In this document: one piece after another, positions 3,001 through 59,262 of the stretch
How the letters are laid out: every line of letters begins with the position of its first letter
How positions within the stretch are numbered: position 1 is the first letter of the stretch
DNA from: Mytilus edulis
Lineage: Eukaryota
Direction: 5' to 3'
NCBI RefSeq assembly: GCF_963676685.1
Contig: NC_092355.1
Location: 13,330,001 to 13,394,000, forward strand
Length of the DNA stretch: 64,000 nt
Notes under the pieces: model-generated
Seen by the model: the letters and a program-made list of their open reading frames with translations, nothing else
Told to the model about the DNA's origin: nothing
The model's database searches: none
Position numbers and translations under genes: made by a program

Positions 3001-3207
3001 ACAAATTCTACTGAATGGTCAGCTTTCAATGCTTTCTTTGAAAAGACCATTGTTCATTGACGACTCAAAAACAATAGAGTTTAAAGAGATTTATGTGAGA
3101 CCATTGTTTAGTGGCTACTATGAGAAAGACATTGAACAGTAAAACATATAGTAGGGTTATTGGTAATTTTGTTTATTTATTTATTGTTTTACGTCAAGAA
3201 AGCTTAA

Positions 3208-9000: not shown

Positions 9001-9047
9001 TAATACCATTACGCGAGTAAAATACTTTTGTCGTTTGTCGTTTGTCG

Positions 9048-9965
9048 ATATTTTGTCGTTGAATGTTAATTCAGAACAATTACAATTTCACAGTGGAATG
9101 CTGGTATATAGGTATAAATAAAAAAAATCTAAAGTTATGTTAGAATTAATTTCAGAAATAGACCGAGATTTAAAATCGTCAAGCAAGTTGTTTAGAATTT
9201 TTTTAAATCCGCATATGATTAATACCATTACGCGAGTAAAATACTTTGGTCGTTTTTCGTTTAAATTGTTTTCAAAATTATAATAGAACAATAACATAAT
9301 GTCATATAATAGAACAATAACATAATGACGGGATCTTTTGAAGTACAGAGTCACGTCATAAGAACCAAAGATATACAGAAAGTCGCATATACAAAACACA
9401 CCAGCAAAAATTTAAGATACTACAAACACATTGACGGGATGTATAAGTTCAGAGCCACGTCAAATTGATATCACAGAAAACAAATCAAACGGTAAAAGTA
9501 ATATACATAATAGAACCAAGACAAATTAAAGAACAGTATAACACGTTGTTGAGATGATAACAAACGTCAGTACGCAGTATCTAGACATCAAGACCATCAG
9601 GTATTATTTGTGAAGTTGATACGGAATATTTATCAACAAGGTTTTGGTACTTTCCGATGGTTTTTTTTCAGAAAAAGGACAAAAAGTTATTTGACATACC
9701 CTTAGTTTATCAACTTTCTGCTCAGACATTGGTGACGTTTTACAAAGTCTGAGTAGGAGCTGCAAGCTCTTGAATATCAAATAAGTTGGGAAATGTATAC
9801 CCTATATGCAGATGAAGTTGGTATATTGCTAGAAAGGTGGGGGAAATTTATCATTTAAAAATCGTCTCGTCTCGTTTGTCATAGATTATGGTACTGAATT
9901 GACTGTGTATGTCAAATTCGAGATATTAATCTTAAAATGAGGCGGATGAAGCCGACTGTATTTCT
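9048..9965 (-). mobile_element. Rearranged Penelope-like RT remnant
   Basis: 9300-9960 aligns with 24480-25125; 9048-9224 duplicates ~6805-6975. Confidence 0.7.
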
Positions 9966-10229
9966 ATAATATTTGTCATAGGTGATGAATAACAGAAAAA
10001 AACAACAGATTCATCGACAGATTTTTTGGAATATACATAATAAGTTTGAGATCAACATCTTCTGGTAAGAAAAATAATATAACACACGACTCCTGCTCAC
10101 ATTGCTATGTCTTAGGAATTGTTATCAATTCATGCTCCGTTAATATTAACTTGATTTATATAAAGTCAACTTCACAAATCAAAATTCGACTCAATCATTA
10201 TAGCGTTTATTGATTTACATTTTATAAAA

Positions 10230-11125
10230 GTTTTATTTCTTATTTTATACATCAACAAATATGTACTGTATAGTACCTAAGGTAGATGGGGTGTCTAAAC
10301 TATAATCTATAGATTTTTTTAATAATTTGCCAAAATGTAGAATAAAAAAGAATGGATCACGGGGCTTATTTTCACGCTACTCGGTGTTCAAAATTGACAG
10401 ATTTTGTAAAGATTATGTATGGAAAACCCAATTTTCTGCATAAAAGCATTAAGTACATAATATTCCACATCTTCAATTTTGTACCCTGTTACAAGATTTT
10501 TCAGACAAAAAACATGTTGACCAATATTAAGATCCATAAATATTTGGTGTAATAATTTCCAATAATTTTTTACCCATGTGCATTCAAAGAAAAAATGATT
10601 ATAGCTATCAGATTTGAAACATAGCTCACAGTTTTCACTATTAATTACCTTCCAGCAATACAGATTATGGTTAATAGCTAAAATATTATGCAGTAGTTTC
10701 CATCTAAACATTTTTAATCTTTTATCTTTTAAAAAAAGACAGGTAAAAGATAGATTTTTCTTAATGAAATGTATGACATTTTCGCCTGAAAGTTGTTTTT
10801 TCCATGAGCAAAAACCTACTGGGAGCTCTTTATTTGACCTGATTATAATATAATAAATTTCTTTAAACTTAATTTTATCTAAATTGTAATACAATCCATT
10901 ACAAAACATTTTAATGTCTTGTGTTATGTTGATTTTAGTATGTTTTGATATATTGCTCTTTAATTTTTGGATCCAAATTTTGGGTAAAGCTTTTCGAAGA
11001 GAAATTAATTCAGCGATCTAGTTTTGTTTCTTTTTAAGTTTATCTATTATTTTATGAGAAATTTCTCCTTTATCATCAATTACATCATTAACAAAAATTA
11101 TCCTTTTTCAGTTGATTAATTTGTA
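10230..11125 (-). mobile_element. 3' end of L1/Tx1-type LINE ORF2 (zinc-knuckle region), decayed
   Basis: FRWKLLHNILAINHNL..W....CELC..DSYNHFFFEC..V..YW is the zf-RVT pattern; absent from copy B. Confidence 0.75.
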
Positions 11126-12819
11126 TAATATGACAATACACATAGTTTTTGACCAACTACATCTGCAAAAACTACTGCAAACGCCAGTCATCGTCGGATT
11201 CTACATTCGTTTAAACCATGAATTAAATAACAAAAAAGCAAAGAGCACAAAACCTTACCAGACACAAGAAATCATAATTGAACGGTGCACATCATTATCT
11301 ATCTGCAGAACAACTAAATAGTATGCACCATGGTCACGATTGTAAATGAGATAAATTATGAAGCCTTGACATATCAATCAATACATTTGCAATATGCAAA
11401 ATTATATCTGCATTCTTTCACGTTATTTCTTCAACCGTGAATATATTAGCTTGTAATTATTTGTAGGGATGAAGCACTGTCAATATAGCTCTTGAAAACG
11501 GATACATTTTGTCGAAATGGTTTTATTACGACCCGTAAATGATAAATTTATGTCGTCAGAAAAATGTTTGTACTAGCTATGAAACATCACATAATGTTTT
11601 AAAAGATTTTTCGAAATTACAATAATTATTATTATGTGATTTGGTTAGTGATGGGAATATTCGAAATTTAAATAGCACTTAATTATTATTCATTTTTTTC
11701 AAGAAAGTACACACTACAAGTTTTAGAAGTTTGAAGACAAATTACCACATAAAAACAAAAAAAAATAATTAGTTTGGTAAATATATAACTTAAGAATTAA
11801 GATCAATAAATAAAGCTGTGTTTAAAATAAGGAAATATTTTTTTGCAATAAAAAGGTTAACTGTATGTCAATCTTTAGGCGTTGAACATTTCTTGACTAA
11901 AAAATTAAACGTATGCCTTAATTTTAAGTGAAAAATGAATGAGCATAAATAGGAATACACTAGTTTTATATATAGCAGCTGAAGCATACTTCTTTTTGTG
12001 GGATTTTCTCGTTGTGTATAAGACCCATTGGTTGAATTCTACCCATTTCTGCTCTACGATCGGGTTGTTGTGTCTTTAACACATGCCCTATAATATTTCT
12101 CAATTTTATCAATTTGAACATTTGGTACTAGCAGATAGATTGATCGTGAATCTTTCTATATGGATTTATTTAGTGGAAATAATGGTAATATATCTAAAAG
12201 AGAAAAAAAATATTTGCGTATCCTATAATTAGCAGTATATTAAAAAAAAAATTATCTCGTTTACAAGTATCTAATAAGTCATACTATAATTTCGGCATAG
12301 AAAAGTATATACGATAGATTAAGATTAAAAGTATGCACAAATAATTCACACTTGAGACGATATAAACAGTTGCTAATAATCCCGATTTAACTTTTTTTTT
12401 TTAAATTCTTACCCGATTTCAAAGGAATATTTGTTCGACCATTTTTGGTATGAAACCGCAAGTGATGTACTATGATTTGTTAGCATTACACGTATAAGTT
12501 ACAATTGCTCAAAACATTCTTACTGCAAGATAACTCATAAGCTATATATGATGTCTTATATGAATTATGTATATAGTTTAGAAAATATATAATATACCTT
12601 ATAGAGTTTAGGTGTATATTACATCTCATATAATTGTGGCATGTTTAAAGCAATTATATTCGTCGGCAACTTAAAACGCTGATTGTTGAACGACTTTATT
12701 TGTTTTCATAACTATGCGATAATGAGAGTTTCATATTTTGCCCAAATGTATGATGCCTTAAATTAAAGGAAAATAAGAAAAGTAAACACAAACACATAAA
12801 AAAATCCGTTATAAAGTTT

Positions 12820-41045: not shown

Positions 41046-41505
41046 ATTGTAATAAACAGTTACAAGCATCAAGGAGCCAAAAATACTCCAATATACTTAA
41101 AGCTACAGAAAAAAAAACTTGAAAATATATGGAGGTCAACATTTAATAAGAACAGCTTGGTATCATTATAAGTTTTTACCCTTTTTTTGTTTCATCTTGA
41201 ATGAACTGACAAAGGTGCTTTGAAACAAAGTTAATCTTAAGTTATATCTGGAATATTTAAACCAAGAAATTATCATCATGGTGAATTTTAATTATTGTTC
41301 ACCATTGAGTTTTGATTTGGTTCAAAGTCACAGTTACGATTTTCAATACTGGATATCATATCAGTATATATTATTTTGCATTATTTTATCATTGATCCAT
41401 ATGATATATACCTTACTACGTAAACACCAAAAAGAGTATTTCGGTCTGAAAGTGGCAATGGAAATACGTGTCATGTATTAAAAAAAAAGATCTTGTTGGT
41501 CGTCT

Positions 41506-41511
41506 TTTATT
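41506..41511 (-). promoter_or_regulatory. Polyadenylation signal of micro-exon gene
   Basis: AATAAA on the minus strand 22 nt after TAA. Confidence 0.5.
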
Positions 41512-41533
41512 ATGCCAACTACATTATGTATGA

Positions 41534-44500
41534 TTAGGCTGGGGCTGTGTGCTTCCTGGCATCATCTACAACAATACACAAATGTTATTACGAAGTTATG
41601 GTAGAGACGACTTCGTGAAATAGAGAACTGTAAACCAACTTATTTTCGCGAGCGTTTTATTTTTGTGACTTTCGCGAGAAGGAAAATAACTCGAATATAA
41701 ATCGTCGCGAAAATGTTAAACTTTTCAGAAAATCGCGAAACATAATAGCCGTGAAGTAATCTAGAAAGGATAAATCGCGAACTCAAGTTTCCTAATGAAA
41801 GATGGTTTACAGTATATTAGATAAAATGGTATTATAGATCTATAAAGATCTGAAGCAGCTTTGCAATGTTTAACTGATTTCATTAACAAGAGTTCGTTCC
41901 ACATATCAGAGACATATCAAATAGGGTTATAAAAATGATTGAACATAAGTATCTTTTCAGAAATCAGAAAATCCTACTTTAATCACATTCTGATGAACAA
42001 TTAACATTGAAATCAACATGAGAAATCAGCAAATAATTGAAAGCTTTATACACAGTATCGCGTTAATATTATTTGTATATGTTAGGTATTTGCAAATTTA
42101 GATGAAGACCCTTATTTGATATATTTTTTTAAAAATTATGCTTTTAGGACATTTATCCTATGTTTCAAGTTACAGTATGACCTCGACCTTAAGGGGAAAT
42201 GTCTGCAACTAATTCTGCAACCATATACCGAACGAAAACAAACACACGATCGAAAAAAAAAAAAACGTTTTAGATCATTAAGTTGAACATACATAACAAT
42301 CATCTATATTTGGTACGGGTGCCACATATGGAGCAGGATCTGCTTACCATTCCGGAGCCCTAGATATCACCCATTTGGTTGGGTTTGTGTTGCTTATTCT
42401 TTAGTTGTATATGTTGTGTCATTTGTACTATTGTTTGTATTTTTCATTTTTAGCCATGGCATTATCAGTTTATTTTCGATTGATGAGTTTTACTATATTT
42501 GGTACACTTTACCTACCTTCAATCCAGGCAAAAACAATCTGTCTACAGTAACTACTCAGTCTCACCAGACGTAATCGTACATGCGTATCTTTGAACAGGA
42601 AAAAAGGCTATACTAATACTATCGGATTAACATACATGTATATTTAAAAAAGCTATACAATATAAAAAAGAAGATGTGATATGATTGCCAATGAGCCAAC
42701 TGTCCACAATGCACCAAAATGACACAGACATTAACAACTATAGGTCACCGTATGGCCTTCAACAATGAGCAAAGTCCATACCGCATAGTCAGCTATAAAA
42801 GGCCCCGATTAGACAATGTAAAACAATTCAAACGAGAATAACGACCTTATTTATATAAAAAAATGAAAGAAAAACAAATATGTAACACATAAACAAACGA
42901 CAACCACTGAATTACAGGCTCCTTACTTGGGACAGACACATACATAAATAATTTGGCGGGGTTCTGTTGCAACTCAAATGAACAAAATATCGCTTATAAC
43001 TCACAACTGTAATTTAAGCGGGAGGTTAAGCTAGTAATAAACTAGGTGTACCCTACCACATGCTGTTGCTTTATATTTGTTTGTAAGTTATTACAATCCA
43101 ACGTTAAATTGTGTTTTATGGACTACCCTCTTTTTAAGTAACCTGAGTGTTCGGGATACATGTAAGTTCACTTTTATATACGGATAGGAAAACAAATCTA
43201 AAACAGCTGTACCAATCGTTACGTTGGTTTATAAAGTCATTTTTACGGCTTTACACTGTTTATATTTACCTTGGAAAATTCAAAATATGTAAGTAGGGTT
43301 AACCCAATCAGTTAATATTAAACTAACCAAGTTGGTGTTTGTAATGGAGACAGCTTTTTCCAGCAATATGTTTTAGAAAAAAAATGTGGAATGTATTTAT
43401 TTATAAACGATACAATGATTTACTTACAATCCGAGACCGAATCGTCATCTGAAAAAAGTTATGAAAGAATAAGGACTCAAAAAGTTCATGTAGATTTAGC
43501 TTTATATTTTTACAACCCAATTTCTAATCAAATTGTGATGGCATGGCTGTTATTTAGAATCGGATTGTACGTTCCTGTATTTCATGGTTTTAAACGAAAC
43601 TGAAACCTGCAGAAAAAACATATATAAACCTGTCCGTGTAAAGAATATACATGAAGTCTTAGCTCGTCTGTTCAGTCCCCGGTGGTTATCATCACCTCAG
43701 TAGTCAGTACTCCGGTGATGTCATGTTTGATAATACATCTTTTATATTGCCCGTAAATGAATTATGCAATTATAATATAACGTATGTCTCAATTACCTCA
43801 GTCAAAGTTTTTTTTATGTCATTTTTGTATCATATATTCCCTTAATTGTATCGGTTCTTACACGTTAATGGCTTTCAAATATTCGGATTTGAGCATTATT
43901 TGTTAATGTTAATAAAAAAAACGCTTCAGACGACTGGCATTTTTTACGTGTTCTTTTCGGTTTTTTAGTTTTTACGTAGTTAAAAAAAAACTTATTTGCT
44001 GGAAATAGTGGATTTTTTTATTGTTTCTTTTTTAACCTTACCATGTAGCCTATCGTGTTCCATTTCCTTATCCCCATTCGTCTCGGTTAAAGCATGGAAA
44101 CCCAGGGCTACTTCTAAGTACAATCTTTGGACATCTAAAAATAGACAAAATGCGATTTACAATAAATGCCGATTTTACAGATACTTTCACCTCGACTTCT
44201 TTATTTCAAATACATGTATAATGTATGTTTATCATGTTTATGTTTAATAATAGAATATGTTTTAATATACCTGTTGTAGGTTTAAAGGGGTATTATATAC
44301 GAGATATTTATATAAAAAATGATTTGTTTAGTTCAATCATTTAAGAAATAAAATAGTGCTTTTGGCAGCCAATTTTGTTCAATTCTGACAAAATAAAACA
44401 GATTTATCATGATTATGTTTACATCGGTTTATTATTTTTGAGAGATGACCAGTTAGATGTGTTTCAGACTAAAATTCACACTTAAAGCTGATACATATAA

Positions 44501-47500
44501 TAAATCATGATTATTATCAACACATTTGGTTTTTAGACTTGTTTATGTGTTTGATAATCGTTTACGTATGTTTTCAATCGAATATAAAAAAAAATGAAAC
44601 CTCGATTGGAATGACTTTTACGGCGTATGCAAATTTAAATCGACAATTATATGTTCATACTAAACATATTGACGACATCAGTTATTGCCCAAAAATTGAC
44701 ATACGCTGACCCTTTCTTTTATATTTCTTCCATTATGAACCATACATTTGTTAAACTCACACTTACCTGCGAAATGATGATGCCTTTCCCATCCGTTTAA
44801 TAAACTTATGACATCTAAAATAAGATTTGGCTGTATTAGTTATAATTTTACCAGTCTAGTAACAACAATGTACACAGAACATAAACCCGATGTCAATATT
44901 TTCACAGGATTATATGTTAGACACTGACTTATGTACTCTAATTTATGGAGTATTTGTATTTTTGGATGCCGTAGAACTTCGATTAAGAAAGAAGGAAGCT
45001 TCTTTTTGATAGCATGATCAAGGCATGTAGTAGCGGAAGTCGCCAATTTGAGTTTGTAATTGAGTAAAATAGGTTTTATATTCCATCAAAAGCTTCTTTT
45101 TGATAGCATGATCAAGGCATGTAGTAGCGGAAGTCGCCTATTTGACTTTGTAAGTGAGTAATATAGGTTTTATATTCCATCAAAAGCTTCTTTTTGATAG
45201 TATGATAAAGGCATGTAGTAGCGGAAGTCGCCTATTTGACTTTGTAATTGAGTAATAGAGGTTTTATATTCCATCAAAAGCTTCTTTTTGATAGTATGAT
45301 CAAGGCATGTAGTAGCGGAAGTCGCCTATTTGACTTTGTAAGTGCGTAATAGAGGTTTTATATTCCATCAAAAGCTTCTTTTTGATAGTATGATCAAGGC
45401 ATGTAGTAGCGGAAGTCGCCTGTTTGACTTTGTAATTGAGTAATAGATGTTTTATATTCCATCAAAAGCTTCTTTTTGATAGCATGATCAAGGCATGTAG
45501 TAGCGGAAGTCGCCTGTTTGACTTTGTAATTGAGTAATATAGGTTTTATATTCCATCAAAAGAAAACAAAGCATACTAATAAATAAATATTTATAAAAAA
45601 AATATAGATAAGAAAAATTGTGATTAATAGATATACAAACACAGAAACAGAACTAAAATGAGAAGGGAAATGTAAATCATTACAAATCACAAAACTTCTT
45701 GTCTGCCTTTGTCGGCCACATATCAATACAAGCTGACATAGAGTAATCATACCTTTTACTAGAAAAATATACAAAATAAAGCAATATGATATAGGTCAAC
45801 GATGCTTGTTAAAAGACCGAAATAAAATAAATAAAGGAATTATCAATTAGCTTTTTATTTCATAAGAGTTCTCTTTACTTACGGTTAGCATCTCGTAAGT
45901 CAGTACAGTGTTCTCCTAAAAATAAAACAAGGCGAAACAAAAGCACTTGCGCTTGAATATTTTTAAACATAACTAGGGTTTAAATCAGAAAATTCTTAAA
46001 CATCGTTTAATACACTTTTACGTTTTTCTATAGAAAATAATCTAAGGATCGTAAAATGACATTCGACCGTTTTAGTTGGAAATTATTTGATAAGGCCATT
46101 TCTTAACAATAAGGCTAAAAGACAACACAATTGAAAAATAAAGACTCAGCAAAACAAATTCCATCAAAACCCGGTATGATCTTTAGTGGTCTGTACGTGT
46201 AAGCAAATTATGCTTCACATGCGGCAATAAACATGATTAGGATGAATCATATATACCGGTTGTTAATGAATGATACATCATTGAGTAAAATACAACGTCT
46301 GATGTGCTCAGTGTTAATAAGGTCAATAATTTAAAAACAAATCGCCACCTATTGTTCGAAGACGCATTTCTATACAACTTTTAAGCTTTTAGTTACAGTA
46401 TGTGTTTTATTTCTTCAAATAATATAACATACCAGTTTCTGTAGGACTTTTCGTGTCATGTTTTGCAAGATCTGTTGATTACATTTATAAAAATATCAAT
46501 CACACAAGTCTAGTAAATAACATAAATAACATAAACAGTACACACTGTACTGCACCAGCTGTGTCTTGTCTATATGCCTTTTTGTATTTCTTTTTTAGCA
46601 ATGTTTTTCTATTTATAGCGATCAACATTGTATGACTTCCGTACCCTTGTTTTTGGCATTTTTTTTAAAGCGATTAAGATTATAACACAATGTTGACTGC
46701 TGTTCCCCTAATTTTGACATTTTTAACTATTATGTCTGTTTGTTTTGTTCACCCATCTTTGTCATCATAATGTAATTGTATTCGAATGTCATACATGTGA
46801 GAGGTTTAGTTATAATTAAAACCAGGTTAAATCAACCATTCTACATCAAAAAATGCCTGTTACAAGTTAGAAAAATAATATTTGTTTTCCATACGCTTGA
46901 TGTGTTTCAGTTTTTTTCATTTTGTCATTTCATCATGTTCATTGCGGAATTTCCGTTTTGAATTTTCCTAGTTCGGTATTTTTTATTTTACTTTTTTAGG
47001 GCAATACATGTCTCTTCAGTGATGCCCAAGTCAGATATTTAAAAATCAAAACCTCTTTAGGAAAAATGTTTGAATAGTTTAGTAAGTTTAATGACAATTA
47101 AAATGTACTCATGTTTGGAACATTTATAAAAAATATAAATTTAATCCTGTAAGTACCAATTTCTACTAATAGTTCACTAACAATGCTTTAGTCGTTTTGT
47201 ATTCATAGTTCTTCGGTTTAACGAAAATTCAGACCTGAGATAATAATATGAAATTTAACGTTAACGCATATCTTTAACATTTTTCACATATTTTAAACAT
47301 ATTATGACACAATCATATAAGCACTGTATGTTGTAATCAACAAATAACGGGTCTGCTTTAAGATATTTTTACACATCGTAATACATACTTAGTCGATGAT
47401 TTTAGCTTACTATTTTGATACATCCTCTAATGCAAAAAAAAAAGATTTATGTGCTTTTTTGCTCTGTATATAACTTTAAGTAAGACTAGCATATATTATC

Positions 47501-50500
47501 CTTTGTAACTTCTTATTCAATTTACTCAATGTAATGTAGTTCCCTATTATTATTTTTTTTTTTGCAATATATCTGAAAGAGGTGCGAACGATACCAAAGA
47601 TACATTTAAAGTCATAAGTCGTAACAAACTAACAATACCATGAAACAATACATTAGAAAACAATTTAGTTCATGAACTCTTCAATTTATCAAGCAAGATT
47701 ATACTTTGATAGACATCTTTGAACTGATGCACATACTACATACTAATTATAACTGGTTTCCCCCTCCCCCGAATATATGGTATTATAACTGCGTTCATGA
47801 TAGATAAAGGCAACAGTAGTATACCGCTGTTCAAAACTCATAAATCCATGGACAAAAAACAAAATCGGGATAACAAACTAAAACCGAGGGAAACGCATAG
47901 AAGATGGGAAGATGTAGTAAGAGTGTCAATGAGACAACTCTCCATCCAAGTCACAATTTATAAAAGTAAACTAGTTCAAGGTACGGTCTTCAACACAGAG
48001 CCTTGACTTACACCGAACAACAAGCTATAAAGGTCCCCTACATATTACTGGTGTCAAACCATTTAAACGGGAAAACCAACAGTATAATCTCTATAGAAAA
48101 CGAGAACCGAGAAACAATTATGAACCACATCAACAAAACACTACTGAACATCATATTCCTGACGTAACATTTTAATGGTACTAAACCTATCTGTTAGCCC
48201 CAAACATCATTCTTACCTTCAATCCAGATCATGATTTGTCTTCGGCATTCTGCATTCATGTGTGTGTTTATGTAGCTTTCAACATGAGTATCTACAAAAA
48301 TATTGATGAAAAACGAAATTTGATGTGTATCTATGACATTATGTGGTACATTGTGCATTACAATTACAGTTGAACCTGTGTAAGGATATACATATTTTGG
48401 GACCATGTACATGTATTGGTTAAAACAGGATCTTGAAATACTCAGGTGTCGGATTAGAAAGTATACACTGTATAACGTTTGATTTGTGAAGTTTACAAAA
48501 ATTTGATACTTCCAATAGGTTTAGTAAATAGCCAACTCTAAAGCACATTTCAAGACGAAAAAGTAAAAAAAACTAGGAAAAATCAAACGCTGTCAATCAA
48601 CGGAACACACGAAAAACAATACCATATTTCTATGAAAAAGTGCAGGGTTAAAGCTAGTTTTATGGCCAGGTAAGCTTCTTACTTGTATGACAGTTGGCTA
48701 TATAAGAAAATAACATTTATGTCTCTCTTAAAGGTTGGGAAAACGCGTACTTATTTTGTTTTAGATGTACATACATGTAGTGTAAGAATTTTCCTACATA
48801 CGTGACCCGAGAAAGTTGTGTTTGTAAACAAAATTTCAGACTGGGTTTAATTTGCACGTTAACTCATATAAATTTCGATTATTGCAATTGTTTGGTTACT
48901 GTCTTATACATGTTATATAAGTAAGGCTCCAAATTTCTTCATATTCATCGACAATAATATTCTTGAAATATTGACCACCGAAATAAGCACACAATTGTCA
49001 TACAACTCTTTTATATAGATTTTTTCATAATTACAGTCCGGATTTCCATTCAAGAAAGCTTCATCATAAACACTCGTATAGCTGTGAACTAATTGGTTGG
49101 AAGGATGACTTCCAACATTATCCAGAAAGAACCCTGTAAAAAATGAAGAAAAAAGACCATTTTAGATGTTTTGTTTTATTTAATTTTTTTTAACAATATG
49201 TTTGTTTAATTTGAATGGGACACCAATAGTTAACAAATAATACATGTCTTAAATGCACGTGATGTTATCGTTGGCAAAATAACAACAAGCATAATTTTGA
49301 ATCTTTTGCTTTAAGTTGGAGTTCGTATATTAAAAAATAAAAATCAACCAAAAATAAGGTAAAGAAAAAAAGTTTAATTCTTGAAATTTTTGGCTCCTTA
49401 TAGATGCTCATCCTTAAGAATGAAGCTATTCATAAATCATATAAGGATTGAATTTAGCTACACCGAGTTAAAAGGTACGTTTCAGGGTTGAGATACTGGC
49501 ATGGTTAACTTTTTTTCTCCGATTGTCCGTTGATATTTCAATATCTAAACAGGAACTCTTTCACGCAATGTAAACCTTTGACATGTTTGAAGAATATAGC
49601 TATCATTTTTAGAACCCTTTTTGAAATATAGATATTCACGCGTTTCAATACATGTACATATATACGTACTTTGACATATAATGAATTTCTGATCGAATAT
49701 ATTTTCTCATTGCTAAAATGACAGAATCTGTTTTAACTGTCTCAGGAATTTTCAATTTTGATTGTCACCTATTCCATTTAATATGTTTTCCGTCAGTTAA
49801 GTAAATAACGGGAACTTTGACTTGTTAACCTCATGACTAAGAATAATATTTTTTTTCTACATGATATTTTTATAAAAATTTAGTTTGCAATAAAAATTAG
49901 GGGCTACAAAATAGTTATGCGTACTTACGTTTTCTATCTTGTAATGATTTATGGTATATATCATGATATAATCTTTCTACAGCTGAAAGAAATAGTGGAA
50001 AAAACAAACATTAGAATTATCATACATATTTTCATGACTTGGAAATGAAAAGGACTAAAACATTTTTTTCCCAATGATTAGAATGTATTTATATACACCA
50101 GTCGACAAAAGTATTTGCATTGTTCCTTTGTTGTATCGTATGACAAAACAACCTGATTTTTTTCAATTTGCATAGTCGTGGCATTATACGAAATGAATTA
50201 CAAAAAAATGTAGCATTTGAAAGTATGATTTGTCTGTCCTTTAAAAACTTATTACGTCTGATTCCATCATATAGCTGTCTGATAACAGAAATGAATTAAA
50301 GCGAAATTCAAAGATGGCAAATATACATAACTTATGCATTGAAAATTTAAACTAGTTTGTAAAATTCATTTAAGATAATTTTTGTTATATAAACTGCTCA
50401 TTCATATCACAACTAACATACCATTATAATTATCGTGCTTAACCCATTCTTCTAACAACAGAATTGCATCTATAAATAAACGAAAATATGTGTCATATTG

Positions 50501-53500
50501 TTATTTTGCTTTTCTATCAATTTAAAAGATCCTTAAAAATAATAATATCACTTTATAGATTGCGTGCGTCAGAAGAGCTTTTCAAGAGTGACTTGCACCA
50601 AAATGTTTTATGGTGATTAAGATTATAAAACAATTTTTACTGCTGTACCCCTATTTTTGATATTTTTACCAATTATGTCTGTGCGTTTTGTTAACACATC
50701 AGTGTTTAAATAATTAAATTTGATGCGATTGTCATACAAAGGCGAGGTTTAGCTAGGTTTAAAAAGAGGTTTAATCTACTATTTTCTACATAAGAAAATG
50801 TTTGTACCAAGTCAAGAATATGACAATTGTTATCCATTCCTCTGTAAATACATCTTTATTTCGTGTGCCATACTTTGCGTTTGCATCTATCCAACCTGTA
50901 CATTAACGATTTTTTGCACTTATTTTAACAGATACTCTCATTTCCGTTTAGCTATTTTGGTCGCATTTTGCGGCGATTCTAAATTGCAATTTTCAAATTT
51001 AATTGATGCAGTTTAGTACATGGTCGCGGCCATTTAAATTCGCGTTATTTTTCTTATCGCGAAATCGTGAAAATAAATCGCTCACAACATTTAGCTGGTT
51101 TACTGCACCCTAAGGTGGTACATCAGATTACAGGGAGATAAGTCTGTAAAATCAGCTGAACGTTTTATTCACGTTTGATTGCGTAAAAAGCTTATGTTAT
51201 TACAAATCCGGTAATTAGTCTAATTCGGTTTGAATCTGACTAAAGACGACACAAAAATATCTATAAATATTTGTAAATGGACTGTATAACTATAAACGTA
51301 AGTTATGGATAAATTAAAAATTCTACTAATTGGTCAGTTTTCAATGCTTTCACTGAAAAGACCATTGCTCATTGACGATTCAAATGAAACCAGAGTTTAG
51401 AGAGTTTTCTATGATGCTATTGTTTAGTGATTACTACGAGAAAAAAACATTGAACAGTAATACATAGAGTAGGGTTATTGCTAATTATATTCATTATTTA
51501 TGTTATTACGTCGAGAAAGCCAAAGTGCCTGTTAAGAACCACCAATTTGAGATGATAACTCTCAGAATGACTTTGGTCAGTGATAATTTCAGAATGCATT
51601 TTTAGAAATATATGAGTTTTGAGTACGTTATTTTTTGTTATTAGTCTATATTGTATGCATAAGTAGACGCGGGAGTACGGCAAAAGATATCACGATTTAT
51701 AAGATATGGTTGAATGATTGATTGTTGGTTGGTTAACGTCCAGTGGTAAATATTACATGCATGCTCAGGACGAGAAAAGGTTAACAATAAATACAACAGG
51801 TAGGTCTAGTAAATGCGGCCATCCGGGATGATGGTCGGGGAAATTTGGACTGTCACGGTAAAAGGAGGGTATATTGGACAAGGGACATAAGTTTTGAGTT
51901 GCAACAGGCCATATAGACCACTCAAAGAGTTGTTGCATGCGTTCTTTGTATGCAAAGAGCATGACAATCTCTTTTCACAAGGCTTTCGATTTTATAGGAT
52001 GTGAGTAACAATAGCTCTATAAACCTTTACAATGATTGCTGCAAAAATTAGGAAAAGCAAACACTTACAAAGTGTAAATATGTTATCGTCAACTGAGAAA
52101 TCATTTGTTTTATTTGACGTTTAAATACTTGACAACATCATGACCATTAAGTTCAATATGTTTACTTACGCTGTTTACGTCTAACACTATGGCATGTGCT
52201 ACCTGTAAAAAGAAATATTATACTTTATTAAAATTGAAAAAAAAATGGAGTTAACTTATATATTTTATATATAATTTGTTTATGTGCATACACTCTATTA
52301 ATTTATATGTGTCATCCATACAAGTATGTGCTATCTAACAATCTGCAAGTAATTCTTAATGTGGGAATACAAATAATGGTTTAAAATTAATATGTCGTTT
52401 TGTCTTTTTTAACATTGAATCGTAGATTAATTCATCATAGATACCAGGTTGAAAGGTTGCATTTGCGCCAGCGTGTAGTCTACAAAAGACCGAATAGTGA
52501 TGCTGGAATAAAAAAAAGGTTAAAAAGTCCAAATAAAGTACGAAGTTGAATAGCAATGAGGACCACAAATTCCTTAAAGTTTAGCCAAATACCTCATTGT
52601 AAAGCTTTGTTTATCTATTATTGGCAACGACAAGCCTTAGTATTTTCAAAATGTAAAGATTTATAAACAGTTAATTTACAATTATGACCATCTCAATGAT
52701 AATACATGCCAACACAGAAGTGCTGACAACTTGACTAGTTATATAGTACCCTCTGTTCATTTTTTTTGGTAATTCGAAATACATGTTCGTATCTAGTCTT
52801 AATAATTTTACTGTAATGTTAGCATTTGCAATACTCAATTTCTTCAAATTGTGCTATGGTGTATAATTTGTATTTTGGTATCTAACTGCTTTAAATTTTC
52901 TTTATCAGCCAATAAAATCTATTTCCTTTGGTAAATAAGTAGGAATATTATAGATTATTGTCCTATATTTCGTCAACTAGTACCAACAAATATGTTTGTG
53001 CATGTTTTATTATTATTTTTGGTAGGAATCTATGGGTTTTTTTTTTGCTGAGTTTACCATTACTGATTAACCTTCATACCTCACTATGATTAAGTTAATA
53101 ATAACCGAATATAAGGCGAGTATAACTAATTAGATAATCTACATCAAATTCAAAGTTACATATATGGGAAAGTTTTGCATACTATCCTTCAGAAAAGGCA
53201 TGTCATATTGCTAGTAAATATAAAATTAAGAAATAAATAATCATTTCATATAGAATAAACAAACATGAAGCGATATGCACATAGAAATACGAGTTAGAAT
53301 AGTAAAAAGAAGATACAATGTAAATACTATAGTCGATTTTCATTACTGTTTATTCAAAAATTATTGCGATGTTTTAATTGTTGCGAAAACTGTGACAGGG
53401 TTATAATCGCAATAATTTGAACTCGAATTTTTATTTTTTTTTAATGTATTAGTAACAAAGACCAACTAGCAGTTATTGAACTGTCTGCTTTTGCTAGATA

Positions 53501-56500
53501 TAAGAAGATTTGGTATGAATGCCAATTTAGACAACTCATCATCCAAGTAAAAGTTTTCTCACACGAAACAACAAGCTTTAAATGGCATCAATAGACCATT
53601 TCCATATTACCGACTTTTGACTCCGGGTTCTTAAATTGTTAGACAGGTTACCTTATACGTGGTAGGACATCCTGGTACTATTCAATTCCGAACAACCAAA
53701 ATAAACTAAAAAAATTATATGATTTGAGCAATTTTAAAGAAAATTTTTTATTTCCGATGTTTGATTCATTTACAGGAAAGCATTTTAAAGGGTACCCAAC
53801 ACTTTTGCTGTATTTGATTTGGGTCGTGTTTTTTTTTTTTTATAAAGTTTAAACAAAATTTTTACTCTGATCTGTTGACAAAAATACAATTTATAAAAAT
53901 TAGAACCACACAATTTATAGGAATAATTTTGTTGGATATATAGCAGTTTGACAGACGTTAATTTTGATCGATGAAAAGCTTGATATTTCCTTACTAATAG
54001 TATGTGATTTAAATGTTCAGCTGATTTTTAAAAGTTAACTCTCTTAGGCGTTCTCAATATGAATTCAAAAGTCATTTTTTTTTATCGTAAATTTTAGTAT
54101 TAAGTATAAGATATCCAATTCAATTACTAGGTAAACAAAGCTGATTAAATTCAGATAGGCATCTTTAAGTTTTTTTATGACTTTTTCAAATCAACTTGGA
54201 TTTTCATCAAATTATGCAGCTATCTTAGTAATATATTGATAGTACTGAATCCCCGGTCACTATGTAGTTTGGTGTATTGCTGTCAAATTTAAGAATTAAA
54301 TTAATCTATGTCAAAAAAAGCTAGGATTTGTAATTTTGGACAAAATTAATAAGATAGTACACTTTAATTCTTTTTATAACTTTTTCAAATCAACTTGGAA
54401 TTTAATCAAACTATACAGCTACCTTGGTAATATATTAATCTTACTAAATACCAGGTCATTATGTAGTCAGATGTATTAATGTCATATTAAAGATTTAAAA
54501 TTAATATAGGTAAAAAAAAGCTTGGATTTGCAGTTCAGACAAAATTCAGATAGTACACTTTATTTTTTTTATAGCTTTTTTCAAATCAACTTGGATTTTC
54601 ATCAAACTATACAGCTACCTTGGTAATATATTGATCTTACTGAATCCCAGGTGGTTATGAAGTTTGGTGTATTGTTGTAAAATTTAAGAATTAAATAAAT
54701 CTAGATAAAAAAGCAAGTCTCTATGCATCAATAAATGACTGATAAACACGAATTAGTAGAAAGATATAAGAATATTTGGAATCTAGGGGGAAAAAAGTGT
54801 ATTTGCAGTTCGGACTATATTCAGATAGTACACTTTTATTCCTTTTATAACTTTTTCAAATCAGCTTGGATTTTCATCAAACTATGCAACTATCTTAGTA
54901 ATAAATTGATCTTACTCAATCACAAGTCGTTACGTAGTTTGGTGTATTGATGTCAAATTAAAGAATTAAATAAATCTAGATAAAAAAGCAAGTCTCTATG
55001 CATCAATAAATGACTGATAAACACGAATTAGTAGAAAGATATAAGAATATTTGGTATGAGTTTCAATGAGACACCTCTACCTCCAAGTCACAAGTTATAT
55101 TAGTAAACCATTATAGGTCAAATAAAGGCAACATTAGTATACCGCTGTTCAAAACTCATAAATCCATGGACAAAAAACAAAGTACGGTCTTCAACACGGA
55201 GCCTTAGATCACACCGAACACCAAGCTCTAAAGGGCCTAACAAAATACTAGTGTAAAACCATTCAAACGGGAAAACCAACGGTCTAATCTATATAAAGAA
55301 CGAGAAACAAGAAACACTTCTGAACCACAAGTTTACGTATAAGTCAAAACGTTTGCTCAGTTATTAGAAATAATATATAATAAGCACAAAACAATCATCA
55401 TTAGTTTTACAATTTTAATAGCCTTCAAGTTAATAAAGATTAAAAATAAAATATCCATACTTACTTTGAAAAAAAAATGAACGATGGGTGGTTGTAGTAG
55501 GAGGCTTTGTGGTGTGCTTGATAGTCGTTTCGTGATGATGTTTAGCTGGTGAAATAGCAATCAGTCCTGAATGAAATTATTAAAAGGAAATTGAATTGCA
55601 CCATCAAATTACAATCCGTTCAAAGCGATATAACATGTCTTTAACCAGGAATATATTTGACAAGAAAAACAAAACAGAAATATCTGTAATCAATTTTATA
55701 AATAAGTTTACGACATAACTTCTGTAAGTATACTGAATTGTTCGTAACTTTCGATGAAGTTTAGTCGTACAATTTGTTGTGAAACTTAACATGAGTGCAT
55801 ACTGATTGTCTCTTGACCAAATGTCGTACTTTTTTTTTGTAGTTATTTATTCATTGTAAATATTGTTCATCCTCAGTTTGATCTATTCAAAAGTGAAAAT
55901 CCCTTATCAAATGACACATTTAAACGCTGAAACACTTCAAAATTACTTCTACTGTTAAGTCTGTTTTTTGTTATATATATTTTACGTGACTATGTATTTA
56001 TGTATCCCGTCATACTTTGAACGACAACATTATTTCATGTCTACCTGTGCGAATTTCAAACGCGCAATTTTTACACCAGAACTTTAAACTTTTCATCCGC
56101 TATGGGTGGATTTAAAATAGATAATTAACATCGTTTAATATAAACAAAATGAGGATGTTAAATTTAATGTATGCCTTTTGTGCTTCTTCGTTACATTTGT
56201 TGTTTTTATAGTGATTAAGATGATAACACAATGTTGACTGTTGTACCCCTATTTTTGACTTATTTACCTATTGTGTCTGTTTGTTTTGTTCACGCATCGT
56301 TGACAATATAATGGAATTTGATGCGACTGTCATACAAGTGAAGGGTTTAGCTAGCTATAAAACCAGGTTCAATCCATTATTTTCTACATAAGAAAATGCC
56401 AGTAAGTCAGGAATATGACAGTTGTTATCTACTCGTTAGATGTGTTTGAGCTTTTGATTTTGCCATTTGATTGTGGACTTTCCTTTTTGAATTTTCCTCG

Positions 56501-59262
56501 GAGTTCAGTATTTTTGTGATTTTACTTTTTTTTCAAACGAACAGATAACAACCGGCATTTTACTGCCTTGTCACAGGCATTTTCTCATGTGTGCTAAACT
56601 TGGTGTTATAGCTAACGAAACCTCTCACTTGTATGGTTATCACCAAAAAAAAAATCAATGATATTGACAACGAGGTGCGAAAACAAATAAACAGACATAA
56701 TAGGTAAAGGTACGTTATTTTTTTTTATTTTTTTACTGGACGGACGGAACTGAGTATTACTTTCATTAAAACAATGAGGTACGATGAGGTGCTTTGTTAA
56801 TTAATATACGACAAGGAAGTCTGTTTTATAAGATAAAATCAAAAGACGAACGCCAAGTTACCAAATCTTAAATAGGCAAACTCTAGAAATGAAATAGATA
56901 CTCAAATAGATTTCCGTACACGATTTCAAAACACAAAATATAAATATCGTACACCGACTTGACTTCTATTATATTTTTCCATTTAGCTAAATAATATCAG
57001 ATTAAAGCAACGTATTTATCGATGGATTTTTTTGGAATATACAGAATTAGTTTTGAGATCAACATCTTCTGGTGAGAAAAAAAGTGAAAATATACAAATC
57101 TCCTGCTCACATTGCAATGTCGAACCAACTGTTATCCATAAACATTACACTCGATGGAAAGTCAATTTCACATAAAAGTCAATCATAATTCGACTCAATC
57201 ATTATAGCTTCAATCGATATAGATTTTTGAACGTATTTTTCGGACATGTTATGGATTGAGTTCGATTAAAAATGGTAAAATGAAAGGAAGGAGATGTGGT
57301 GTGATTGGCAATGAGAAACCTATCCACTGAAATTAACTGAATTGGATGTAATTAGCTACAGTCAGCCATAAGGCTTTCCGAAATGGTACCGACCAGAACA
57401 TGCACGACAAAGGCTTAATATAATGTGATAACCAATACCGTGGTGTCGTTAATTGTTGTAGTATAACTCATAACGTTGGAATTCTTCTTGCAGATTTACG
57501 CATTTGCTAGTCATGTTAGTTCTCTAAGTTTTTAACGTGCACTTTGGGGTAATAGTTTGGTTCATATCAAAAATAGTAGGATAACATTTAATTTTTCATA
57601 TAACGTTGTCAATTTGTCAAAATGAATAAGTTGTGCACAATATAATGACAATACATCTTTCCTTATCGTTATGCGGTATACGGAAATGTGAACTAAACGT
57701 CAAGTAATTAAATCTGATCTATTTAGAGCATGCTATTTGTTAACTGATACACACAACAATACACAACAATTGCACACTTACAATATACAAATGTTCAAAC
57801 ACAATCCCAGGCAAATTACTATGCTAGTAAACATGCAAATTTCTACTGATATAAATTATTAAAAACAAAGCAAAGAGAAAAGAAAATAGTCAAAGGAGGA
57901 TAACTATATTTTTGACGTTTAATATTACATTTCTTTAGCAGTAACACTTTCTGCCATCAATAACAAGTTGCCTACAATGCTATCAGCTATGTTTTTAGTT
58001 GGCAATCTACATGCGTTGATTCGAGCGTAACTCATGGGTCTAGTAAACACGAAACACCGGTCTTGCGTACAGCATTATGCATCTGCATTTTATAAGTATG
58101 AACTATTAGGGATATGCAAACTACAATACATTGCTGTCATATGTGATTGCTAATCGGTTTATGTTTGAAAATCAGGCTTGTTCTGATAGACATGTGAAAT
58201 AACTAAAAATAAAACGCTCAATATAATGTGATAAGTGCTAACCGGCCATTGTTTTATATTGTTTGCAGAAAAACAACAAAATAAACTAATTGTTAACTCG
58301 TTACATTTTTCGTAAAGATAGCAGATGTCAAAGGCACAATGTTTCGCCTCCATGTCATGTTGTAATTTCTATGATTGTTAAAAATAAAAAATAAAAGGTC
58401 TTTACGTCTTGATTGGTTATTGATTTCCAGAGAAATCACTTTAGTTTATTTTTCAATTAATGCTAAATCTGCTAGAGAATACACTCATAACTCTTCTTTT
58501 GTTTAACTATATATGTTCTGTATTGTTTGTTTACCTCTGAACATATCATTTGTATGCACTTGCGGCAAACGAGTTATATTTAAAACAATCGCTAGTTTAT
58601 TACAGAAAATATTTAATGATGCAGAAATCCTTGGTTTACATTCTTATAAGCTTGGTTTATCTATAATATACAGAGTACGATCGGTGACCCTCATTCCACA
58701 TTGTTCCACATTTCTTATCATTGCATATTGTCGGTTGTAGTATAGTTTTAAAAGTTTCAAGGTTAATGACGCAATTCCCTTATCACTTTTTATAAACTTT
58801 CTACAAATTGATGACTTTTTTTAACAGGGAAGAAACTGACCATTATCTTTTTAAATTAAAATCACATTCGATCTTATATACGATAATCGCCAAAGGGTAA
58901 TGGATTATGTTGGCCCTGACGGACAAGAAGAAACAGTAAAAGAAACCATGGCCAGTTATAGTGTATATAATTCTATTTACAACTTTTAACCAATACTAAC
59001 AGTAGCAGTAGCATTCGTATATGTTATAAGAGTCAAATCGTCCAATTCATGTGTTTTTACTGCAGATGATTGATTTGTATACGACAATAAATATAACGTT
59101 TTCGAGTAAACAAATTTGCAAACAGTACTTTAAACGCCAATTATCAAATGAATGTCTATTTTGACTAGTTCCACCTTCGTTTAAACCTGTTATTAAAATA
59201 CAAATAAGCATAGAGCACAAAATCTTACCAGACACAAGAAACCACAATTGAACGGTACACAT
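41534..59262 (-). CDS. Micro-exon gene, 14 coding exons, 260-aa predicted secreted His-rich protein with two internal repeats (unknown family)
   Basis: Exons (minus): 59262-59229, 55566-55465, 52202-52170, 50469-50422, 49982-49929, 49133-49035, 48291-48217, 46471-46433, 45915-45883, 44814-44767, 44134-44042, 43448-43428, 42588-42517, 41565-41534. All are GT-AG and phase 1; total 783 nt with no internal stop. Protein: MCTVQLWFLVSGLIAISPA-KHHHETTIKHTTKPPTTTTHRSFFFQSSTCHSVRRKQHAILLLEEWVKHDNYNAVERLYHDIYHKSLQDRKRFFLDNVGSHPSNQLVHSYTSVYDEAFLNGNPDYTHVESYINTHMNAECRRQIMIWIEDLAKHDTKSPTETGEHCTDLRDANHVISLLNGWERHHHFADVQRLYLEVALGFHALTETNGDKEMEHDRLHDDDSVSDYTHVRLRLVRLSSYCRQIVFAWIEDDARKHTAPA*. Exons 1-6 are conserved in the paralogue with only frame-preserving indels. 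Exons 9-14 repeat exons 3-8. AATAAA lies 22 nt after the stop. Confidence 0.88.
41627..41814. mobile_element. MITE
   Basis: ACTGTAAACCA...TGGTTTACAGT terminal inverted repeat with internal TTCGCG/CGCGAA motifs. Confidence 0.6.
42662..42960. mobile_element. Abundant short interspersed repeat (AAAAGAAGATGTGGTATGATTGCCAATGAG family)
   Basis: Related pieces at 75-124, ~47900-48160, ~55050-55330, ~57290. Confidence 0.65.
44997..45560. repeat. 94-bp tandem repeat, 6 copies, intronic
   Basis: AGCTTCTTTTTGATAG... recurs at 44997, 45091, 45185, 45279 etc.; copies differ by few bases. Confidence 0.95.
54175..55053. repeat. ~197-bp degenerate tandem repeat, ~4 copies
   Basis: CTTTTTCAAATCAACTTGGA... 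at ~54181, 54380, 54576, 54851; the ~100-bp segment 54680-54780 is duplicated at 54955-55053. Confidence 0.8.

What the first reader, a model, noticed from the sequence alone, without database searches (positions are those of the whole stretch)
41534..59262. Hidden all-phase-1 micro-exon gene encoding an unrecognised secreted two-repeat protein
Seen: 14 coding exons of 21-102 nt over 17.7 kb splice into one 260-aa frame starting with a signal-peptide-like MCTVQLWFLVSGLIAISPA. Every internal exon is a multiple of 3 and every intron is phase 1. The ORF track misses the gene. Two independent supports: the paralogue preserves exons 1-6 with frame-keeping indels, and exons 9-14 repeat exons 3-8 with matching sizes (33/33, 48/48, 75/72 nt). 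Established: symmetric micro-exons with a signal peptide define the schistosome micro-exon genes (MEGs), which diversify by exon skipping. Inference: this is an analogous, probably lineage-specific bivalve system in which any internal exon could be skipped in frame. I recognise no known domain.
Basis: partly seen in the sequence, partly recalled or inferred. Interest (0 to 1): 0.92.

Follow-up and report, generated by a model that had tools for sequence, protein, structure and literature searches.

The report
Mussel secreted gene of short phase-1 exons
This is a real, transcribed blue-mussel gene whose 14 short same-phase exons encode a secreted, histidine-rich protein with two copies of an undescribed helical domain, but it is already annotated as "uncharacterized protein" and shows little sign of schistosome-style diversification by exon skipping.

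Summary
I rebuilt the gene independently on the minus strand. It has 14 exons from 59262 to 34 (41534), all with AG/GT sites, all introns in phase 1, and 783 coding bases giving 260 aa.

One RNA contig (654 nt, depth 521) carries the six junctions E8 to E14 exactly as modelled. The product is letter-for-letter RefSeq XP_071141377.1, "uncharacterized protein isoform X2 [Mytilus edulis]". So the gene is hidden from an ORF track but not from annotation.

It is one of four tandem paralogues within about 118 kb of chromosome piece C12. They share a roughly 95-110 aa helical "X" domain with a Cys pair and conserved His. Pfam, PDB sequence and fold searches gave no significant match. The oldest member is X-linker-Y and has a scallop homologue, so the domain is not limited to Mytilus.

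The MEG analogy is only partly supported. The exons are symmetric and a signal peptide is present. However, only 3 of 12 internal exons are 36 bp or shorter, the full-length mRNA dominates, and the exons encode a folded domain. The evidence for skipping is thin: one RefSeq isoform in M. galloprovincialis lacks E6-E8, and one minor contig lacks E10.

Earlier scan notes cover this same stretch only.

The parts
59229..59262 (-). Exon 1, coding part (34 nt): ATG and the first half of the signal peptide, MCTVQLWFLVS, plus the first base of a split Gly codon. The extent of the 5' UTR was not determined.
   Evidence: The donor is gtaaga. It is the first 11 residues of P0011.
55465..55566 (-). Exon 2 (102 nt): the end of the signal peptide (GLIAISPA) and a His/Thr/Pro-rich linker.
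   Evidence: The paralogue copy carries a +42 nt in-frame insertion.
52170..52202 (-). Exon 3 (33 nt): start of domain X1, with the first conserved Cys.
   Evidence: Splice sites are kept in gene B.
50422..50469 (-). Exon 4 (48 nt): the AILLLEEWVKHDNYN helix with the conserved W and His.
   Evidence: It is 98% identical to gene B. 48-nt copies are present in genes C and D.
49929..49982 (-). Exon 5 (54 nt): VERLYHDIYHKSLQDRK. It ends in the RK that becomes RKR across the splice junction.
   Evidence: Copies in B, C and D measure 57/60/60 nt.
49035..49133 (-). Exon 6 (99 nt): a variable loop followed by the conserved SYTSVYDEAF segment.
   Evidence: Copies measure 138 nt (B) and 66 nt (C, D), all in frame. 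It is present in P0011 and P0006.
48217..48291 (-). Exon 7 (75 nt): THVESYINTHMNAECRRQIMIWIE, with the second conserved Cys of X1.
   Evidence: 75-nt copies are present in B, C and D.
46433..46471 (-). Exon 8 (39 nt): a short inter-domain linker. The homologous exon is 57 nt in B and 234 nt in D.
   Evidence: The donor junction 46433|45915 is seen in RNA.
45883..45915 (-). Exon 9 (33 nt): start of domain X2, with a conserved Cys.
   Evidence: Both junctions are in the X3 contig.
44767..44814 (-). Exon 10 (48 nt): VISLLNGWERHHHFA. It is missing from one minor contig.
   Evidence: Both junctions are in the X3 main contig. The minor contig joins 45885 to 44136.
44042..44134 (-). Exon 11 (93 nt): VQRLYLEVALGFH...
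   Evidence: It occupies contig positions 388-480 and both junctions are seen. It served as the by-reference query that found the database proteins.
43428..43448 (-). Exon 12 (21 nt): DDSVSD, the smallest exon.
   Evidence: Both junctions are in the X3 contig.
42517..42588 (-). Exon 13 (72 nt): THVRLRLVRLSSYCRQIVFAWIE, with the second Cys of X2.
   Evidence: Both junctions are in the X3 contig. It repeats E7.
41491..41565 (-). Exon 14: 32 coding nt ending in TAA at 41536-41534, then a short 3' UTR with AATAAA at 41511-41506. The transcript ends near 41491.
   Evidence: The estimate of the end rests on the depth in bin 41300-41499 and on 174 contig nt after E11.
565..11292 (-). Gene B (tandem paralogue), exons 1-6: 11259-11292, 5543-5686, 4781-4813, 1975-2022, 1498-1554 and 565-702. 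Exons 7-14 lie up to 8.6 kb before the window start. TGA replaces the Trp codon at 11272-11274, and the E2 acceptor is ctg instead of cag.

Best explanation
This is an ordinary, functional, already annotated Mytilus edulis gene (product XP_071141377.1).

**Product.**
- The protein is 260 aa and secreted. The mature form is about 28 kDa with 10% His.
- It consists of a signal peptide, a Thr/Pro/His-rich linker, and two copies of an undescribed, mostly helical X domain of about 95-110 aa.
- Each X copy has one Cys near its start and one in its last helix, and I infer that these form a disulfide.
- The first copy has a family-conserved furin-type RKR/RRKR site in a loop. The mature protein may therefore be a two-chain, disulfide-linked form (inferred).
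- The conserved His, Asp and Glu suggest an extracellular metal-dependent binding or structural role (inferred, weak).

**Gene architecture.**
- The short exons with uniform phase 1 were inherited from the ancestral X-domain gene. That ancestor has the X-linker-Y form of gene D, and this form is also found in a scallop.
- The two-repeat form arose by tandem duplication of the six-exon block E3-E8. The duplication stayed in frame because the block boundaries share one phase.
- Whole-gene duplication then produced a four-gene cluster.

**Splicing.** The full-length mRNA is the main product. In-frame exon loss is possible and occasionally seen or annotated. It is best read as a by-product of exon symmetry rather than a programmed diversity generator.
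For: **Gene model.**
- The model and its phases were rebuilt independently.
- A spliced contig of depth 521 carries six exact junctions.
- The model is identical to P0011. The M. galloprovincialis orthologues P0006 and P0012 match it closely.

**Family and exon structure.**
- Genes A-D all lie on the minus strand of C12, and all X-domain exons in them are phase 1-1 and multiples of 3 in length.
- Whole-genome searches find X-domain exons only in this cluster.
- Between A and B, exons are 88.6% identical against 79.5% for introns, and dN/dS is 0.49.
- The two repeats align with invariant C, W, H, LY, DY.HV, C and WIED.
- The D type (P0016) is conserved in five Mytilus species. It is 38% identical to the scallop protein P0027 across X, linker and Y. 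The P0027 X part matches the X1 of P0011 at E=4e-5.

**Structure and sequence features.**
- AF2 of P0016 gives pLDDT 70-78 for helices at 51-66, 70-82 and 114-144. The loop 84-98 that holds RRKR is of low confidence.
- The N-terminus has a hydrophobic core (12-residue Kyte-Doolittle mean up to 2.19) followed by SPA|K.
Against: - Function is entirely inferred. There is no domain match, no confident fold for the A protein itself (pLDDT 34) and no tissue information.
- Three raw RNA runs of a sister species gave zero depth on the exons. Expression is therefore restricted, and it was verified in only one run.
- E1-E7 junctions were not seen in reads here.
- Isoforms that drop exons, or that mix exons from neighbouring paralogues, are annotated in two species. 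Regulated variant production is therefore not excluded.
Confidence: 0.7

Rival explanations
1. This is a MEG-like diversity generator. Because every exon in the whole tandem cluster is in phase 1, the mussel would deliberately produce a repertoire of secreted variants. It would do so by skipping internal exons and by splicing 5' exons of one paralogue onto the body of the next.
For: - All internal exons are symmetric.
- M. galloprovincialis LOC143055009 has isoform X1 (295 aa) and isoform X2 (205 aa). X2 lacks exactly E6+E7+E8, which is 270 nt.
- A minor X3 contig (depth 103 against 521) joins E9 to E11.
- M. edulis isoform X1 (P0004) combines A exons 1-4 with B exons 5-14.
- The D gene has isoforms starting with C-gene exons in both M. 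edulis and M. galloprovincialis, and these join at two different exon boundaries.
Against: - The exons are mostly longer than 36 bp.
- The main transcript is full length.
- Skipped exons carry invariant core residues (W, His, Cys), so the variants would be misfolded halves of a domain.
- The E10-less contig has AG where CC is expected at the junction. It matches none of genes A, B or C.
- RefSeq X isoforms are computed models. Chimeric ones could arise from protein-guided chaining, which is especially likely where B's own exons 1-2 are damaged.
- None of these junctions was checked in reads.
Confidence: 0.15
2. This is a precursor of processed products. The protein is cut at the conserved RKR/RRKR site, and perhaps elsewhere. 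This would release an N-terminal His/Thr-rich fragment and a C-terminal part, in the manner of a prohormone or propeptide. This reading is compatible with the best explanation rather than exclusive of it.
For: - The site is conserved: RKR at residues 89-91 in gene A, DRKR in B, KRKR in C, RRKR in D and RR in the scallop.
- It sits in a low-confidence loop between helices.
- It is followed by the most variable segment, E6, which measures 66-138 nt across the paralogues.
Against: - There is only one such site.
- There is no amidation signal and no repeated peptide.
- The flanking parts belong to one domain whose two Cys lie on opposite sides of the site. That pattern points to a nicked two-chain protein, not to released peptides.
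- There are no proteomic data.
Confidence: 0.25
3. This is an annotation or assembly artefact, or a dying gene with no function.
For: - The neighbouring copy B carries a stop codon and a lost acceptor in this assembly.
- dN/dS of 0.49 indicates only moderate constraint.
- There were no reads in three RNA runs.
Against: - A correctly spliced, polyadenylation-signal-terminated transcript is present at depth 521.
- The 260-aa frame is intact and 95% conserved in M. galloprovincialis.
- Exons are better conserved than introns.
- Splice sites are kept in four paralogues.
Confidence: 0.03

Closest known systems
Schistosome micro-exon genes (MEGs; DeMarco et al. 2010, as summarised in PMC8293314 and PMC4015677)
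   Same: - A signal peptide is followed by a run of short symmetric exons that can be removed without a frameshift.
- The genes form a tandemly expanded family.
- The family has no homologues outside a narrow taxon range.
   Different: - MEG exons are mainly 36 bp or less and make up as much as 75% of the coding sequence. Here only 3 of 12 internal exons are 36 bp or less, and they range from 21 to 102 nt.
- MEGs show up to seven sequenced splice variants per family. Here one dominant mRNA is seen.
- The exons here encode a conserved helical, Cys-paired domain rather than a short variable peptide.
- There is no sequence relationship.
Modular extracellular-protein genes with phase 1-1 exons (exon-shuffling modules; named from my own knowledge of Patthy's work, not tested here)
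   Same: - The product is a secreted protein.
- The intron after the signal peptide is in phase 1.
- A phase-compatible exon block was duplicated in tandem to make a second domain copy.
   Different: In classical modules, one exon or a few exons correspond to one whole domain bounded by phase-1 introns. Here the domain itself is cut by five further introns, all also in phase 1.
Its own family: Mytilus 'uncharacterized protein' genes XP_071141373/4 (D type), XP_071144012 (C type) and LOC143055008-11, plus Ylistrum balloti LOC132562843
   Same: - All share the X domain with the same conserved residues.
- In the three M. edulis paralogues examined, the exon cuts are the same.
- All have His/Thr/Pro/Ala/Lys-rich linkers.
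- The RKR-type site is conserved.
   Different: - Gene A has lost the C-terminal Cys-containing Y domain and carries a second X copy instead.
- Its inter-domain linker exon has shrunk to 39 nt, against 234 nt in D.
- It has a different signal-peptide exon from C and D.

Membership tests
Schistosome-type micro-exon gene (MEG) class | The coding region is composed mainly of very short exons (36 bp or less) | tested here: not met
   Internal exons measure 102, 33, 48, 54, 99, 75, 39, 33, 48, 93, 21 and 72 nt. Only three are 36 nt or less, and together they cover 87 of 783 coding nt. The definition comes from PMC8293314.
Schistosome-type micro-exon gene (MEG) class | Exons are symmetric, so removing one keeps the reading frame | tested here: met
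   All 12 internal exons are multiples of 3 and all 13 introns are in phase 1.
Schistosome-type micro-exon gene (MEG) class | A signal peptide is encoded at the 5' end and the product is secreted | tested here: inconclusive
   The N-terminus has a hydrophobic core followed by SPA|K. No SignalP tool was available and there are no protein data.
Schistosome-type micro-exon gene (MEG) class | Multiple splice variants arise from exon skipping and are demonstrated in transcripts | tested here: inconclusive
   There is one dominant full-length contig and one minor E10-less contig with an unexplained 2-nt difference. One RefSeq model isoform in M. galloprovincialis lacks E6-E8. Only 6 kb and one expressing run could be examined.
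Schistosome-type micro-exon gene (MEG) class | Homology to a schistosome MEG family | tested here: not met
   Profile and single-sequence searches of 1.8 to 5.8 billion proteins returned only Mytilus and one scallop protein, apart from one junk repeat (P0002) and one Y-domain-only protein (P0028).
Mytilus/pteriomorph X-domain family (unnamed; XP_071141373-77, XP_071144012, LOC143055008-11, LOC132562843) | X domain with conserved C ... I.LL..W..H ... V..LY ... DY.HV ... C....WIE | tested here: met
   The alignment of seven domain copies shows these residues. See also alignments A2 and A3, and BLASTP against the scallop protein P0027 at E=4e-5.
Mytilus/pteriomorph X-domain family (unnamed; XP_071141373-77, XP_071144012, LOC143055008-11, LOC132562843) | Location in the tandem cluster on C12 with the same exon cuts | tested here: met
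Any Pfam family or solved structure | A match above the curated cut-off, or a clear structural match | tested here: not met
   - Pfam best scores were 16-19 bits against cut-offs of 23-35.
- The PDB sequence profile gave 0 hits.
- The best VIA-align match was Z 5.4, and the tool's own note says that Z below about 13 for helical bundles may mean only a common arrangement.
- The ESM Atlas gave no usable hit.

The most novel reading that the evidence does not exclude
The whole four-gene cluster would work as one combinatorial cassette system. Every exon is in phase 1 and the paralogues lie head to tail on one strand. Read-through transcripts could therefore splice exon n of an upstream copy to exon n+1 of the next copy, as in the annotated A1-4/B5-14, C1-2/D3 and C1-4/D5 forms. 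They could also drop internal exons. The result would be a repertoire of secreted two-domain variants in a bivalve. This would include rescue of gene B, whose own signal-peptide exons are broken in this assembly.
Probability: 0.12. Interest if true: 0.8.

Novelty: new member of a known kind. Interest (0 to 1): 0.35.

Why it matters
The result turns an apparently hidden gene into a defined object. That object is an expressed, annotated but wholly uncharacterised family of secreted His-rich proteins, found in mussels and at least one scallop.

- The domain has no match in Pfam or the PDB, so it is a candidate for a new domain entry and for biochemical work. Relevant questions include metal binding, convertase processing and a possible role in a mussel secretion.
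- The uniform phase-1 architecture explains how the domain was duplicated in frame.
- The same architecture makes two ideas directly testable with long-read cDNA: exon skipping and splicing between paralogues.
- If those variants prove abundant, this would be the first MEG-like system outside flatworms. On present evidence that is unlikely.

Tried and rejected
- **Joined model not searched.** Exons were joined only inside local scripts, to check frame, identity, repeats and dN/dS. Whole-protein searches used the database record P0011, which was reached through a by-reference search with exon 11.
- **Pfam.** Nothing scored above the cut-offs on P0001, P0003, P0011, P0015, P0016 or P0022.
- **PDB sequence profile.** 0 hits.
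- **ESM Atlas.** No usable hit in two calls.
- **AlphaFold2.** The model of the A protein had pLDDT 34 and was unusable. The D-type model had pLDDT 41 overall, with only the X helices reaching 70-78.
- **Fold search.** pdb_via_wide gave only non-significant helical-bundle matches, with best Z 5.4. Interferons at Z of about 4 were rejected as chance.
- **Literature.** No relevant paper links micro-exon genes to bivalves. No paper mentions the accessions. DeMarco 2010 (PMC2909574) is not held.
- **Cathepsin-propeptide (I29) and hemerythrin ideas.** I considered both from motif resemblance and dropped them, because Pfam gave no hit even at E up to 10.
- **Runs X1-X14.** Their 0.06-0.07 word share cannot be taken as expression. 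The exons alone would give about 3.4% of words, and transcribed transposon fragments in the introns (42300-43100) account for much of the rest.
- **Raw RNA runs X21, X22 and X24.** They gave no depth on the exons.
- **The E10-less contig.** It could not be assigned to gene A, B or C.

Full report
**Where and what**

The window is G000:C12:13330001-13394000 of a 1.37-Gb genome. The contig length of 82,303,794 equals the contig that carries the Mytilus edulis RefSeq proteins found later. The organism is therefore the blue mussel. The window has 31.7% G+C and no N.

**Checking the observation**

The peptide MCTVQLWFLV is encoded on the minus strand from 59262. The sequence shows ATG...TCT G|gtaaga. 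The next exon starts after tcattcag at 55566.

I scanned the minus strand for AG...GT intervals that are open in phase 1. I then chose among candidates using similarity between the two repeats, and found the terminal exon with its TAA at 41534. This gave 14 exons:

| Exon | Coordinates |
|---|---|
| E1 | 59262-59229 |
| E2 | 55566-55465 |
| E3 | 52202-52170 |
| E4 | 50469-50422 |
| E5 | 49982-49929 |
| E6 | 49133-49035 |
| E7 | 48291-48217 |
| E8 | 46471-46433 |
| E9 | 45915-45883 |
| E10 | 44814-44767 |
| E11 | 44134-44042 |
| E12 | 43448-43428 |
| E13 | 42588-42517 |
| E14 | 41565-41534 |

Joined in a local script, they make 783 nt, or 260 codons plus a stop. Every intron is in phase 1 and every internal exon is a multiple of 3. 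The 60-aa ORF list does not reveal the gene.

**RNA evidence**

One run search and one read-laying run were allowed. On window:40900-46880, run X3 gave one contig of 654 nt at depth 521. X3 consists of Logan contigs from the organism whose DNA runs hold 73-86% of the window's words.

The contig carries six joints, all CT..AC on the plus strand, which is GT..AG on the minus strand. They lie at 46433|45915, 45883|44814, 44767|44134, 44042|43448, 43428|42588 and 42517|41565. These are exactly the E8-E14 boundaries of the model, including the 21-nt exon 12.

The contig runs 174 nt beyond E11. This fits a 3' UTR of about 45-50 nt ending just after the AATAAA at 41511. The 387 nt before E11 fit E5-E10 of the model plus 39 nt of E4, but this does not prove those junctions.

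Three raw RNA-seq runs of a sister species showed no depth on the exons, only on intronic transposon fragments. Expression is therefore restricted, and it was verified in one run only.

A second contig (depth 103) joins 45885 to 44136, which is E9 to E11 without E10. It has AG where the gene has CC at the junction. The E9 ends of genes B and C (TC, TA) do not fit either. It shows that an E10-less message of some allele or copy exists, and no more than that.

**Paralogues**

Window 48385-59440 is duplicated at 1-11471. I fetched 70 kb before the window and 30 kb after it. Exon-by-exon blastn and tblastn then showed four head-to-tail genes on the minus strand:

| Gene | Span (window coordinates) | Content |
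|---|---|---|
| A | 59262 to 41534 | This finding |
| B | 11292 to -8635 | All 14 exons |
| C | about -12800 to -37116 | X-linker-X |
| D | about -45975 to -58193 | X-linker-Y |

- Every X-domain exon copy keeps AG/GT, phase 1 and a length that is a multiple of 3. E4 measures 48 nt in all four genes, E5 measures 54/57/60/60, E6 measures 99/138/66/66, and E7 measures 75 in all four.
- Gene B differs from A by in-frame indels only. In this assembly it has TGA for Trp at codon 7 and has lost the E2 acceptor.
- Between A and B, exons are 88.6% identical against 79.5% for the flanking introns, and dN/dS is 0.49.
- Whole-genome DNA searches with E7, E10, E11 and E13, and a profile search, find X-domain exons nowhere else.

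**Reaching the protein databases without typing the joined model**

The joined step was left out of every search tool.

An alignment of exon 11 from genes A, B and C was searched against 1.84 billion representatives. It returned P0001 and P0003. From these, word-based searches and cluster look-ups gave the family.

- P0011 (XP_071141377.1, "uncharacterized protein isoform X2 [Mytilus edulis]", 260 aa) is identical to my model.
- VDH98571.1 of M. galloprovincialis is 95% identical over 260 aa.

The gene is therefore already annotated, though nothing is known about it. No paper in the library mentions these accessions. No relevant paper links micro-exon genes to bivalves.

**What the protein is**

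- Pfam gives nothing above its cut-offs for six family members.
- A PDB sequence profile gives no hit.
- The ESM Atlas gives no usable neighbour.
- AlphaFold2 on the A protein is unusable, at pLDDT 34 and all-helical.
- On the D-type protein, the X domain reaches pLDDT 70-78 as a bundle of about five helices. The loop 84-98 that holds RRKR has low confidence.
- The fold search gave only non-significant helical matches, with best Z 5.4.

The seven X copies share C, I.LL..W..H, V..LY, H, D, DY.HV, C and WIED. Mature A protein is 10.4% His, has a pI of 6.4 and has four Cys, two per repeat. A dibasic RKR/RRKR site after E5 is conserved in every first-copy X.

**Family history**

The D type is signal peptide, X, a TTAKPTHAHV-type linker, then a Cys-containing Y domain. 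It is conserved in five Mytilus species. It is 38% identical to a scallop protein over X, linker and Y. The scallop X part also matches the X1 of gene A at E=4e-5. The Y domain occurs with thrombospondin repeats in another protein (P0028).

The likely history (inference) is X-linker-Y, then X-linker-X (the C type), then the A/B type. The A/B type has a new leader and N-terminal linker, and a shrunken 39-57-nt inter-domain linker. The micro-exon character belongs to the X domain only. The linker and Y exons of gene D measure about 100-234 nt.

**Comparison with MEGs**

By the published summaries, MEGs have four features (PMC8293314; PMC4015677):
- They are made mainly of symmetric exons of 36 bp or less.
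- They encode secreted proteins.
- They show several sequenced skipping variants.
- They have no homologues outside schistosomes.

This gene shares the symmetry and the leader. Only 3 of 12 internal exons are 36 bp or less. One full-length mRNA dominates. The exons carry invariant core residues of a folded domain, so it is not a MEG.

It might still behave like one. M. galloprovincialis LOC143055009 has a RefSeq isoform lacking exactly E6-E8.

More curiously, RefSeq models in two species join 5' exons of one paralogue to the body of the next, always from exon n to exon n+1:
- A1-4/B5-14 in M. edulis
- C1-2/D3 in both species
- C1-4/D5 in M. galloprovincialis

These forms stay in frame only because the whole cluster is in phase 1. 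They are computed models and I could not test their junctions, so I keep this as the novel case at low probability.

**Verdict**

- This is a real, expressed, annotated but uncharacterised secreted two-X-domain protein, and a member of a small pteriomorph-bivalve family.
- Its uniform phase-1 short exons were inherited and then duplicated as a block.
- Programmed diversification is not shown.

Noticed in passing
window 11272-11274 and 5687-5689 (gene B): In this assembly, gene B has TGA in place of the Trp codon of its signal peptide and ctg instead of cag at the exon-2 acceptor. The other 12 exons are intact and in frame. The M. galloprovincialis orthologue (P0010) is intact.
   Followed up: partly
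window 50422 (A-E4 donor) to 1554 (B-E5 acceptor); also outside the window at about -14900 to -50989: RefSeq isoforms join 5' exons of one paralogue to the body of the next. XP_071141376.1 combines A exons 1-4 with B exons 5-14. XP_071141374.1 combines C exons 1-2 with D from exon 3. M. galloprovincialis LOC143055008 X2 and X3 do the same at two different junctions. Whether these are real read-through splicing or model artefacts is not known.
   Followed up: partly
window 49929-49133 (E5/E6 junction): The split codon creates RKR. An RKR/KRKR/RRKR site is conserved at this place in all first-copy X domains, and RR in the scallop. It sits in a low-confidence loop and is followed by the most length-variable exon.
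   Followed up: partly
window 44996-45562 (intron 9): A tandem array of about six copies of a 94-bp unit, 94-96% identical.
   Followed up: no
window 54143-55057 (intron 2): Tandemly repeated units of about 200-280 bp, 82-89% identical.
   Followed up: no
window 40900-41050, 42300-43100, 46500-46880: Intronic and flanking transposon-like fragments are covered at very high depth in all four RNA runs, with many differences. These are dispersed repeats transcribed elsewhere, and they inflate word-share figures for this locus.
   Followed up: no
G000:C12 13271807-13275449 (gene D, outside the window); also C14:21107032-21107313 and C13:7190614-7190733: The C-terminal Y domain of the D-type protein (about 135 aa, 6 Cys, no Pfam match) recurs elsewhere in the genome. 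It also occurs behind thrombospondin type-1 repeats in a Logan-derived protein (P0028). It is another undescribed domain.
   Followed up: no
window 44136/45885: A minor RNA contig (depth 103) joins E9 to E11 without E10. It reads AG where gene A has CC, B has TC and C has TA. Its source allele or copy is unexplained.
   Followed up: partly
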